A stretch of 63,760 bases of DNA, filler included, from Octopus bimaculoides (Eukaryota), in assembly GCF_001194135.2 (NCBI RefSeq). It is 6 parts of 6 records of this genome, joined end to end, with 100 filler letters (N's around TTAATTAATTAA, not from the genome) between each part and the next. Parts side by side here need not be neighbours in the genome. Positions count along the whole stretch, not along the records: positions 21,925 to 50,489 come from NC_068993.1; 5 more parts are not named here. One strand, given 5' to 3'. The stretch's first letter is position 1. Each line of letters opens with the position of its first letter. Under the pieces are notes generated by a model that saw nothing but the letters and a program-made list of their open reading frames with translations, did not search any database and was not told the DNA's origin. Shown piece after piece: positions 38,887-39,696 of this stretch. The position numbers and the translations under genes are program-made.

Positions 38887-39696
38887 AATTATTTAAAATT
38901 ATAGTACAGGGTATCAAGAGATACCACCACGCTGAAAAAATAGCAGTCAAATCCTGACTCTAAAACCACAATAAATGTCCGCATGGCACGATTAGCGAAG
39001 ACGAAGACCAAATAAACCAATAAAAATAAAGATAATTCCAAATCCTGGATTTCTGGCTTGCATAAATAATAATGCTCTGCCTTCATCAGTGGAATATACT
39101 CTAGTACATAAATACAAATACATGTATATTAACAGTATACTTACATATACGGATGTATACATACATATATATGCACGTATGCACACAACTAGCTTAAATA
39201 GCCCGCCTAAACAACCTTTCGTGTGATTTTTACTGGTTTATTTGGTCTTCGTCTTCACTAATCGTGCCATGCGGACATTTATTGTGGTTTTAGAGTCAGG
39301 ATTTGACTGCTATTTTTTCAGCGTGGTGGTNNNNNNNNNNAATAAACCAATAAAAATAAAGATAATTCCAAATCCTGGATTTCTGGCTTGCATAAATAAT
39401 AATGCTCTGCCTTCATCAGTGGAATATACTCTAGTACATAAATACAAATACATGTATATTAACAGTATACTTACATATACGGATGTATACATACATATAT
39501 ATGCACGTATGCACACAACTAGCTTAAATAGCCCGCCTAAACAACCTTTCGTGTGATTTTTACTGGTTTATTTGGTCTTCGTCTTCACTAATCGTGCCAT
39601 GCGGACATTTATTGTGGTTTTAGAGTCAGGATTTGACTGCTATTTTTTCAGCGTGGTGGTATCTCTTAATACCCTGTATTATAATTTTAAATAATT
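38887..39696. repeat. 141-bp inverted repeat element (about 480 bp after collapsing a probable false duplication)
   Basis: 38887-39027 is the reverse complement of 39556-39696 with 4 mismatches, all transitions; 198-nt spacer; no TSD found. Confidence 0.9.
39035..39095 (-). ncRNA. minimal type I hammerhead-like motif (identical copy at 39365-39425)
   Basis: Minus strand: ATTCCA-CTGATGA-A-GGC...GCC-A-GAA-ATCC(A)GGAT-T-TGGAAT; 6-bp helix I, near-palindromic helix III, A opposite A at the base of helix II. Confidence 0.55.

What the first reader, a model, noticed from the sequence alone, without database searches (positions are those of the whole stretch)
38887..39696. 141-bp near-perfect fold-back with a hammerhead-like motif in its loop
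Seen: the arms 38887-39027 and 39556-39696 differ at only 4 positions, there is no TSD, and a minus-strand hammerhead-like motif (6-bp helix I, ATCC-A-GGAT helix III) sits 8 nt inside one arm. Established: Penelope insertions often carry inverted partial pseudo-LTRs. Inference: a young non-autonomous PLE derivative rather than a MITE. If transcribed it would give about 140 bp of dsRNA (ADAR or Dicer substrate) that might be self-cleaved. The A-A apposition before GAAA may impair catalysis.
Basis: partly seen in the sequence, partly recalled or inferred. Interest (0 to 1): 0.75.

Follow-up and report, generated by a model that had tools for sequence, protein, structure and literature searches.

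The report
Truncated inverted retroelement with hammerhead motif
The fold-back is real but about 480 bp long, not 810 bp, because the assembly repeats 320 bases across a gap, and it looks like an ordinary dead, head-to-head pair of truncated Penelope-type retroelement copies, one of which keeps a small, probably weak hammerhead ribozyme motif.

Summary
The 141-nt inverted arms (38887-39027 / 39556-39696) are real and differ at 4 positions, all transitions. The 528-nt "loop" is probably inflated. The 320 nt before the 10-N gap (39011-39330) are exactly the 320 nt after it (39341-39660). Collapsing this contig overlap gives arm 141 + spacer 198 + arm 141 = 480 bp with one hammerhead-like motif, not two.

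The minus-strand motif (39095->39035) is not chance: 0 hits in 20 Mb of composition-matched random sequence. It has most published features of Penelope-like-element (PLE) "min-hammerheads". These are CUGAUGA/GAAA cores, an extra A after A9, a long helix II, a small near-palindromic helix III and U17. An extra A before G12 is non-standard and likely impairs catalysis.

The motif points toward the outer end of the longer copy, 154 nt from it. The site is AT-rich microsatellite. A second, textbook min-hammerhead lies at 46667-46712.

Best reading: two 5'-truncated copies (339 nt and 141 nt) laid down head-to-head by target-primed reverse transcription from both cut strands, as shown in vitro for a PLE.

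Not shown: homology to any PLE, other copies, transcription or cleavage. No relatives were found in any reachable collection. This is a known kind of element and of low interest.

The parts
38887..39027 (-). Left arm (141 nt). It is read as the 3'-terminal 141 nt of the longer, minus-sense truncated copy, with the outer end at 38887.
   Evidence: Inverted repeat I1, 97% complementary; 4 mismatches listed.
39028..39225 (-). Spacer of 198 nt, the part of the longer copy that the shorter copy lacks. From left to right: 7 nt, the hammerhead motif, about 85 nt of TA/CA-rich microsatellite-like sequence (39105-39190), and 35 nt of unique sequence.
   Evidence: I2 places a second inverted partner at 39226-39330, 198 nt from the left arm. 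The microsatellite-like part gives only low-complexity matches.
39035..39095 (-). Hammerhead-like motif. Helix I is 39095-39090 paired with 39040-35. CUGAUGA is 39089-83, with an extra A at 39082. Helix II is 39081-39055 (GGC/GCC plus GCAU/AUGC). A non-standard extra A is at 39054. GAAA is 39053-50. Helix III is 39050-42. U17 is at 39041, and the predicted cut lies between 39041 and 39040.
   Evidence: Sequence. Helices I and II are kept in the minimum-energy fold, while helix III is weak (-8.8 versus -12.8 kcal/mol). It is the only descriptor hit in the piece, with 0 hits in 20 Mb of random sequence. No Rfam hit.
39226..39330 (+). First 105 nt of the right arm as read at the end of the contig left of the gap.
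   Evidence: I2: 105 nt, 98% complementary to 38923-39027. The contig ends inside the 80-nt stretch (38916-38995 equivalent) where the two arms are identical.
39331..39340 (.). 10-N assembly gap, most likely spurious: overlapping contig ends that were not merged.
   Evidence: Exact 320-nt suffix/prefix overlap. It is the only one of nine gaps in the piece with an overlap and the only one not in a microsatellite.
39341..39660 (.). Exact duplicate of 39011-39330. It includes a second print of the hammerhead motif at 39365-39425 on the minus strand.
   Evidence: (D3).
39556..39696 (+). Right arm (141 nt). It is read as the shorter, plus-sense 5'-truncated copy, with the outer end at 39696.
39697..39773 (+). 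77-nt one-sided extension between the right arm and the microsatellite. It may be a PLE-type 'tail' or simply flank. It contains a 33-nt near-perfect palindrome at 39735-39767.
   Evidence: Self-match 39735-39767. One-sided tails in PLEs are described in PMC8557442 and PMC11167929. Assigning this stretch to the element is inference.
38870..38885 (+). Left copy of the 16-nt direct repeat TATATATGTATATGTA; the right copy is at 39774-39789. It is a possible long target-site duplication.
   Evidence: These are the only two exact copies in the piece, but there are 20 one-mismatch variants elsewhere, so the case is ambiguous.
39774..39789 (+). Right copy of the 16-nt direct repeat.

Best explanation
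The locus is one insertion made of two 5'-truncated copies of the 3'-terminal/pseudo-LTR region of a hammerhead-bearing retroelement of the Penelope-like (PLE) type. The copies lie head-to-head in AT-rich microsatellite DNA.

- The longer copy is on the minus strand, 39225->38887, 339 nt. It keeps a PLE-style minimal hammerhead whose predicted cut site is 154 nt from the copy's 3' end.
- The shorter copy is on the plus strand and is the right arm, 141 nt. It stops before the hammerhead.
- The overlap of the two copies is the 141-nt inverted repeat.

Inferred mechanism: the element's endonuclease cut both strands of an AT-rich target. Each 3'-OH primed reverse transcription from the same internal site on the template RNA, so both junctions carry the element's 3' end facing outward. 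Both cDNAs were incomplete.

The 810-bp span in the scaffold is an artefact. Two contigs that overlap by 320 nt were joined with a 10-N gap instead of being merged, so the real element is about 480 bp with a 198-nt spacer and a single hammerhead.

The copy is non-coding and immobile. The lone hammerhead needs a partner to build helix III and carries an extra A before G12, so it is probably inactive or very weak. If the locus is transcribed, the RNA would fold into a stem of about 141 bp. Nothing here shows that it is transcribed.
For: Shown here:
- Arms of 141 nt with 4 transitions.
- Exact 320-nt overlap across the gap, unique among the nine gaps of the piece.
- If a 330-bp tandem were as old as the arms (2.84% diverged), about 9 differences would be expected in 320 nt. 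None is seen (Poisson P about 1e-4, computed).
- The inverted repeat exists within a single contig (I2) and its arms differ, so it is not a scaffolding or palindrome artefact.
- The hammerhead descriptor gave 0 hits in 20 Mb of random sequence and only this hit in the piece.
- The motif is in sense orientation towards the outer end.
- A second, textbook min-hammerhead lies at 46667-46712, where 0.002 per piece is expected. This genome therefore carries such elements.
- No coding capacity nearby.
- The collapsed element folds at -264 (plus strand) and -291 kcal/mol (minus strand).

From the literature:
- PLE insertions are 5'-truncated, often with an inverted truncated copy. They have one-sided tails, target (TA)n microsatellites and break short-read assemblies (PMC8557442).
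- PLE min-hammerheads have a long helix II, an extra nucleotide between 9 and 10.1, G10.1-C11.1 and a small palindromic helix III. They act as dimers with low activity (PMC4209133).
- A purified PLE protein cuts AT-rich DNA on both strands and extends both. Reverse transcription starts 85-92 nt downstream of the hammerhead cut site, with a second start that defines the tail (PMC11167929).
Against: - There is no sequence homology to any PLE, and no RT or GIY-YIG remnant nearby.
- No other copy was found in the piece or in the protein, metagenome, viral or prokaryote collections. These collections hardly cover animal genomes.
- Rfam hammerhead models do not match. They also miss the textbook min-hammerhead at 46667, so this negative carries little weight.
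- The extra A between C11.1 and G12 is not a described PLE feature.
- The 77-nt 'tail' is about twice the published 30-40 bp.
- The 16-nt direct repeat is microsatellite and may be chance.
- About 85 nt of the spacer looks like local microsatellite rather than element sequence.
- The overlap-versus-tandem question cannot be settled without reads.
Confidence: 0.55

Rival explanations
1. The 330-bp direct repeat is real. The locus would then be a short tandem (two or more units) of a hammerhead-bearing unit, that is a non-LTR retrozyme-like array flanked by inverted arms. Two hammerheads 330 nt apart on the same strand could pair as a dimer and release a roughly 330-nt RNA able to circularise.
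For: - TRF reports period 330 with 2.0 copies.
- Unit size (150-450 bp), low GC (33.8%) and a type I hammerhead fit animal retrozymes (PMC7229834).
- PLE-type hammerheads need a second copy to form helix III. RNAcofold pairs two motifs through AUCCAGGAU.
- An assembler would also break contigs at an exact tandem.
Against: - The two blocks are 100% identical over 320 nt while the arms have diverged by 2.8% (P about 1e-4 for equal age).
- The repeat is exactly the end of one contig and the start of the next, across a minimal 10-N gap. That is the signature of an unmerged overlap.
- Collapsing gives a perfectly symmetric 141/198/141 structure.
- The unit boundary would have to fall inside both arms.
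Confidence: 0.12
2. It is a fold-back or long-TIR miniature DNA transposon (MITE). Its internal region happens to contain, or once captured, a hammerhead-like sequence.
For: - A size of 480 bp, non-coding, AT-rich, with long terminal inverted repeats.
- Nothing ties it by homology to a retroelement.
Against: - No 2-10 bp target-site duplication abuts the arms.
- No second copy in 28.5 kb.
- A chance hammerhead within the spacer is very improbable: fewer than 1 per 20 Mb.
- The motif's sense orientation and its distance to the outer end fit the retroelement model.
Confidence: 0.13
3. It is a local inverted duplication made by replication template switching or repair. A single old, truncated hammerhead-bearing insertion had 141 nt of its end copied in reverse orientation nearby. 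No double-strand priming by an element enzyme was involved.
For: - The microsatellite-rich, AT-rich context is prone to fork stalling.
- The spacer contains microsatellite-like sequence (39105-39190).
- The arms need not have been born together with the insertion.
Against: - The duplicated segment ends exactly at the inferred 3' terminus of the element on both sides. A retro-insertion explains this directly and a random duplication does not.
- Inverted truncated copies are a documented regular outcome of PLE insertion.
Confidence: 0.15
4. The whole fold-back is an assembly chimera: a palindromic contig produced from a hairpin library or read artefact.
For: The locus contains a contig break, and the assembly is gap-rich.
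Against: - The arms differ at 4 positions.
- The spacer is 198 nt and asymmetric.
- The inverted repeat is present within one contig.
- Both flanks continue into unique sequence.
Confidence: 0.03

Closest known systems
Penelope-like element (PLE) insertions with an inverted 5'-truncated copy and hammerhead-bearing pseudo-LTR (Evgen'ev & Arkhipova; Craig et al. 2021, PMC8557442; PAc in vitro, PMC11167929)
   Same: - Head-to-head truncated copies forming an inverted repeat.
- A hammerhead near the 3'/pseudo-LTR region, in sense orientation.
- An AT-rich, microsatellite target.
- A one-sided extra segment.
- An assembly break at the structure.
- A hammerhead-to-terminus distance of the same order: 154 nt here, against about 90-130 nt in PAc.
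   Different: - No RT/GIY-YIG ORF and no sequence homology could be shown.
- The candidate tail is 77 nt rather than 30-40.
- Only 339 nt of the element survive.
PLE minimal hammerheads (min-HHR; Cervera & de la Pena 2014, PMC4209133)
   Same: - Type I topology with CUGAUGA and GAAA cores.
- An extra nucleotide after A9.
- G-C closing a long, 7-bp helix II.
- A small near-palindromic helix III (AUCC-A-GGAU).
- U at position 17.
   Different: - An extra A between C11.1 and G12. Read without bulges, this is an A.A apposition at 10.1/11.1.
- Helix I of 6 bp is longer than the 4-5 bp typical of these motifs.
- No family alignment is available to show covariation.
Animal non-LTR retrozymes (Cervera & de la Pena 2020, PMC7229834; Li et al. 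2026 preprint 10.64898/2026.07.22.740005)
   Same: - A low-GC, non-coding unit of a few hundred bp carrying a type I hammerhead.
- An apparent 330-bp repeat.
   Different: - The repeat is most likely an assembly duplication.
- Retrozymes are head-to-tail arrays, not fold-backs.
Fold-back / long-TIR MITEs
   Same: - Short and non-coding.
- Long inverted termini.
- A strong hairpin potential.
   Different: - No abutting target-site duplication.
- No other copies were seen.
- It carries a ribozyme motif oriented as in a retroelement.
Canonical type I hammerhead (Rfam RF00163 and related families)
   Same: Core boxes and three-helix topology.
   Different: It scores below E=10 against every Rfam hammerhead model.

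Membership tests
Penelope-like element insertion | RT (telomerase-like) plus GIY-YIG endonuclease ORF, or sequence homology to a PLE consensus | tested here: not met
   No Pfam domain in the ten longest non-low-complexity ORFs of 30.6-45.4 kb. Only low-complexity ORFs are present. A 339-nt truncated copy would not be expected to keep the ORF. Homology to a consensus could not be tested because no animal repeat library or genome was available.
Penelope-like element insertion | 5'-truncated copies in tandem or inverted arrangement (pseudo-LTR), with 3' ends facing outward | tested here: met
   Arms of 141 nt. The longer copy extends 198 nt further inward. The hammerhead is in sense orientation towards the outer end.
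Penelope-like element insertion | Hammerhead motif in the pseudo-LTR / 3' region | tested here: met
   Motif at 39095->39035, 154 nt from the terminus, with chance expectation below 1 per 20 Mb.
Penelope-like element insertion | AT-rich or microsatellite target, variable target-site duplication, optional one-sided tail | tested here: inconclusive
   TA/TG microsatellite lies on both sides. A 16-nt exact direct repeat brackets the fold-back plus 77 nt, but similar 16-mers are common in the piece.
PLE minimal hammerhead (min-HHR) | CUGANGA and GAAA cores, U16.1-H17, helix I and helix II | tested here: met
PLE minimal hammerhead (min-HHR) | Extra nucleotide between A9 and 10.1 | tested here: met
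   An A (window 39082 on the minus strand) follows CUGAUGA. The feature is listed in PMC4209133.
PLE minimal hammerhead (min-HHR) | G10.1-C11.1 directly followed by G12 A13 A14 | tested here: not met
   A G-C pair closes helix II, but an extra A (39054) separates C11.1 from G12.
PLE minimal hammerhead (min-HHR) | Palindromic 15.2-16.2 / loop 3, allowing a dimer | tested here: met
   AUCC-A-GGAU. RNAcofold pairs two copies through this segment.
PLE minimal hammerhead (min-HHR) | Consensus family with covariation; self-cleavage | not testable with these tools
   No related copies could be retrieved. There is no wet assay.
Canonical hammerhead (Rfam models) | Score at or above the family gathering threshold | tested here: not met
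   No hammerhead family at gathering threshold or at E<=10. Control: the textbook min-HHR at 46667-46712 is also missed.
Non-LTR retrozyme | Head-to-tail tandem repeats of 150-450 bp, each with a type I hammerhead | tested here: inconclusive
   The 330-bp repeat is an exact contig-end overlap across a 10-N gap. With 0 differences where about 9 would be expected at equal age, a genuine old tandem is unlikely.
MITE / fold-back DNA transposon | Terminal inverted repeats | tested here: met
   141 nt, 97%.
MITE / fold-back DNA transposon | Short constant target-site duplication abutting the repeats | tested here: not met
   The flanks ...TATGTAA| and |ATTACCT share no 2-10 bp direct repeat.
MITE / fold-back DNA transposon | Many homogeneous copies in the genome | not testable with these tools
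   There is none in the 28.5-kb piece, and the genome was not available.

The most novel reading that the evidence does not exclude
The 330-bp repeat is genuine. The locus would then be a retrozyme-like tandem embedded in a fold-back. Its hammerhead variant, with helix II extended by an A.A apposition, would be active as a dimer. It would release roughly 330-nt RNAs, possibly circular, that carry a near-perfect double-stranded stem of 105-141 bp. That would be a ribozyme-processed substrate for long-dsRNA pathways (ADAR, Dicer) in an animal genome.
Probability: 0.06. Interest if true: 0.6.

Novelty: new member of a known kind. Interest (0 to 1): 0.25.

Why it matters
There are two practical lessons.

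- A 10-N gap flanked by 320 identical bases inflated a repeat element by 70% and doubled an RNA motif. Scans of draft assemblies should collapse such overlaps before interpreting structure.
- Rfam's hammerhead models miss the minimal, dimer-type hammerheads of Penelope-like elements, including a textbook one in this same piece. A descriptor search is needed for this class.

Biologically, the locus is one more example of the head-to-head truncated insertions expected if a PLE enzyme primes reverse transcription from both cut strands. That in vitro result still lacks many genomic illustrations. On its own, the locus does not open a new question.

Tried and rejected
- Rfam at gathering threshold over the piece, and at E<=10 over 1.2 kb and over 101 nt. 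There were no hammerhead hits. The only hits were low-complexity miRNA-like matches on TA/CA sequence and a weak C/D-box look-alike, rejected because it has no box D.
- Search for other copies inside the piece by blastn with word size 7. Only microsatellite matches were found.
- Protein-space probes using element ORFs. The 65-aa ORF covering the arm and the hammerhead found no candidate. Exact look-ups of the 64-aa and 71-aa ORFs found nothing on record.
- An ORF from a neighbouring interspersed repeat, used to identify the organism, gave no hit.
- DNA pattern scans. An arm 20-mer found nothing in metagenomes or in prokaryote genomes. An arm 17-mer in viral contigs gave two chance 18-19-nt matches. 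A hammerhead-core pattern in metagenomes gave 10 hits, all in high-GC bacterial contigs (54-70% GC) with no helix I pairing, read as chance matches.
- Paralogous 'empty site' from other copies of the flanking old repeat. Only partial copies exist (26500-26791 and about 28300-28433), and neither spans the insertion point.
- tRNA scan for a SINE head found none.
- Similarity between the two hammerhead-bearing segments is limited to the 11-nt CTGATGAAGGC.
- Three of the four arm mismatches are G.U wobbles on the hammerhead strand. I rejected this as evidence of RNA-level selection, because a 3:1 split is not significant.
- The source organism was not identified by any tool. The repeat landscape reminded me of cephalopod genomes, but that is memory only and no conclusion rests on it.

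Full report
**Observation**

The region was read directly and scanned for repeats. The inverted repeat is real. 38887-39027 and 39556-39696 are 141 nt long and differ at four positions (38904 G/A, 38915 C/T, 38996 C/T, 39020 A/G), all transitions. Complementarity stops at the arm ends, and the immediate flanks (...TATGTAA| and |ATTACCT...) share no short direct repeat.

**The gap**

- The 320 bases before the 10-N gap (39011-39330) are exactly the 320 bases after it (39341-39660). This is a perfect suffix/prefix overlap of the two contigs. It also shows up as direct repeat D3 and as a 330-period "tandem".
- Of the nine gaps in the piece, this is the only one with such an overlap and the only one not inside a microsatellite.
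- The left contig already holds an inverted partner of the left arm at 39226-39330 (105 nt, 98%), only 198 nt from it (I2).
- That contig ends inside the 80-nt stretch where the two arms are identical. This is where a k-mer assembler loses uniqueness.
- Collapsing the overlap gives a symmetric element: arm 141, spacer 198 (39028-39225), arm 141, in total 480 bp at 33.8% GC.

A genuine tandem cannot be excluded without reads, but it is disfavoured. The arms have diverged by 2.84%, so a tandem of the same age should show about 9 differences in 320 nt. It shows none (Poisson P about 1e-4, computed). The 528-nt loop, the 810-bp span and the second print of the motif (39425->39365) are therefore most probably assembly artefacts.

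The fold-back itself is not an artefact. It exists within one contig, its arms differ, and its spacer is asymmetric.

**The hammerhead-like motif**

On the minus strand, 39095->39035 reads AUUCCA-CUGAUGA-A-GGC-AGA-GCAU-UAUUAUUU-AUGC-AA-GCC-A-GAA-AUCC-A-GGAU-U|UGGAAU.

- Helix I has 6 bp.
- Helix II has 3 + 4 bp, split by an internal loop.
- Helix III is weak as a monomer: 3 bp closed by a 3-nt loop.
- The minimum-energy fold keeps helices I and II but not helix III. The hammerhead fold scores -8.8 kcal/mol against -12.8 for the minimum.

I wrote a descriptor looser than the hit. It allowed G.U pairs, a mismatch at 10.1/11.1, helix II of at least 3 bp, helix III of at least 3 bp and helix I of 4-6 bp. 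It finds only this motif in the 28.5-kb piece. It finds nothing in 20 Mb of first-order Markov sequence with the piece's dinucleotide content. The piece itself holds 18 CTGANGA heptamers on both strands.

The motif is therefore not a chance juxtaposition. It derives from a hammerhead.

Rfam gives no hammerhead match at gathering threshold, nor at E<=10 in 1.2 kb or in 101 nt. That negative carries little weight, because the same search also misses a textbook minimal hammerhead elsewhere in the piece (described below).

**Comparison with published PLE hammerheads**

Cervera & de la Pena (PMC4209133) list the recurrent traits of PLE "min-HHRs":

- a helix II longer than usual;
- a short helix I;
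- a conserved G10.1-C11.1 pair;
- palindromic 15.2-16.2 and loop 3;
- action as dimers, with low activity in vitro.

The motif here has the extra A after A9, a G-C pair closing a 7-bp helix II, and a near-palindromic AUCC-A-GGAU that pairs between two copies in RNAcofold.

It departs in one respect. An extra A sits between C11.1 and G12.

From what is generally known of the hammerhead core, I infer that an insertion next to G12 should lower or abolish activity. That is inference and was not tested.

**Context**

- The element is non-coding. There are only low-complexity ORFs, no Pfam domain in the ten best candidates between 30.6 and 45.4 kb, and no tRNA.
- It lies in TA/TG microsatellite, inside what looks like an old interspersed repeat. 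Partial copies of that repeat are at 26500-26791 (67.5% identity) and about 28300-28433.
- A 16-nt exact direct repeat, TATATATGTATATGTA, occurs at 38870-38885, abutting the left arm. It occurs again at 39774-39789, 77 nt beyond the right arm.
- These are the only exact copies in the piece, but 20 one-mismatch variants occur elsewhere. A long target-site duplication is therefore possible but not demonstrable.
- The 77-nt one-sided segment (39697-39773) contains a 33-nt near-perfect palindrome.
- A relaxed min-HHR descriptor found a second motif on the plus strand at 46667-46712: GACAC-CUGAUGA-A-GGCUG-(10 nt)-CAGCC-GAAA-CG-U-U|GUGUU. The expectation is 0.002 per piece (3 hits in 40 Mb).
- This second motif shows every listed min-HHR trait. 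Its motif-bearing stretch runs between two microsatellite tracts.
- It shares nothing with the fold-back beyond CTGATGAAGGC. The genome thus carries several families of such motifs.

**Mechanism**

Craig et al. (PMC8557442) describe the following for PLE insertions:

- they are strongly 5'-truncated;
- they often sit in partial tandems;
- they often have an inverted 5'-truncated copy adjacent, which creates inverted repeats;
- they often have a 30-40-bp tail at one end only;
- they are biased to microsatellites;
- they are troublesome for short-read assemblies.

The in vitro study of the Anolis element PAc (PMC11167929) adds three points. The PLE protein cuts AT-rich DNA (ATT) on both strands and extends both. 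Reverse transcription starts at an internal RNA site 111-118 nt into the ORF, while the hammerhead cut site is at +26, so the insertion terminus lies about 85-92 nt downstream of the cut. The tail is the stretch between two alternative start sites.

Applied to this locus, the elements fit as follows.

- Both outer ends of the fold-back are the same sequence, the inferred reverse-transcription start.
- The hammerhead is in sense orientation toward the left outer end, 154 nt from it.
- The right copy stops after 141 nt.
- The left copy continues for 339 nt.

This is what priming from both cut strands on the same RNA region would leave, with both cDNAs incomplete. The steps of that model are inferred. 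What is shown is the geometry, the non-random hammerhead, the AT-rich microsatellite site and the absence of coding capacity.

**What could not be done**

No relative of the arms, spacer or motif could be found. The searches covered the protein collection, metagenome contigs, viral contigs and prokaryote genomes. None of these collections is designed to hold animal genomic repeats, so these negatives say little. As a result, family membership, copy number, a truncation series, conservation of the motif, and the status of the extra A all remain untested. The source organism was not identified by any tool.

If transcribed on either strand, the collapsed element would fold into a stem of about 141 bp, at -264 kcal/mol on the plus strand and -291 on the minus strand. 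On the minus strand three of the four mismatches become G.U pairs, which is not significant. Transcription, editing, dicing and self-cleavage are all untested. A lone dimer-type hammerhead with an abnormal core, sitting 7 nt from a very stable stem, is more likely inert than active.

**Verdict**

The arms and the motif are right, but the size and the loop are wrong. The PLE reading is the best supported but is unproven at the level of homology. The "non-autonomous family" and "young" qualifiers are unsupported. This is a new member of a known kind and of low interest.

The main rivals are:

- a real retrozyme-like tandem (about 0.12);
- a long-TIR MITE (about 0.13);
- a repair-generated inverted duplication of an old insertion (about 0.15).

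Noticed in passing
window 46667-46712 (+): A second, textbook PLE-type minimal hammerhead: GACAC-CTGATGA-A-GGCTG-(10 nt)-CAGCC-GAAA-CG-T-T|GTGTT. It lies in a stretch running from about 46600 to about 46830, between two microsatellite tracts. The expectation is 0.002 per piece. It is not detected by Rfam, and it has no similarity to the fold-back beyond CTGATGAAGGC.
   Followed up: partly
window 39735-39767: A 33-nt near-perfect palindrome, GATAAGATCAATATTTTAAATATCGATCTTATC (16-bp stem, 1 mismatch). 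It lies in the 77-nt segment between the right arm and the microsatellite.
   Followed up: no
window 38551-38843 vs 26500-26791 (-); 39880-40033 vs about 28300-28433 (-): Both flanks of the fold-back match other partial copies of old interspersed repeats in the piece, at 67-74% identity. The fold-back seems to sit inside or next to an older, decayed repeat whose middle is TA/CA microsatellite. ARAGORN finds no tRNA.
   Followed up: partly
window 26490, 30323, 35901, 41439, 42399, 45452, 47276, 48844 (gaps): Seven of the other eight assembly gaps in the piece abut microsatellite-like sequence ((TA)n, (TG)n, (AC)n, (AG)n or mixed TG/TA) on at least one side. For the gap at 47276-47684 only its right flank is TA-rich. 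None has a contig-end overlap beyond the 15-nt (TA)n overlaps at 30323 and 48844. The assembly looks like a short-read draft that breaks at simple repeats.
   Followed up: yes
window 38000-38250: A long imperfect trinucleotide tract, (TCC)n/(TCA)n. On the minus strand it gives a 125-aa D/E/N-rich ORF (37960-38337). No evidence was sought that it is an exon.
   Followed up: no
window 39105-39184 and 39435-39514: Rfam E-value hits to mir-1277, mir-3149 and mir-297 (31-38 bits, against thresholds of 81-100). They fall on TA/CA-rich low-complexity sequence in the spacer and are treated as compositional matches.
   Followed up: yes
window 38904, 38915, 38996, 39020: All four arm differences are transitions, one of them at a CpG (38996). 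Three of the four are G.U wobbles in the minus-strand RNA hairpin and one in the plus-strand hairpin. This is not statistically meaningful.
   Followed up: yes
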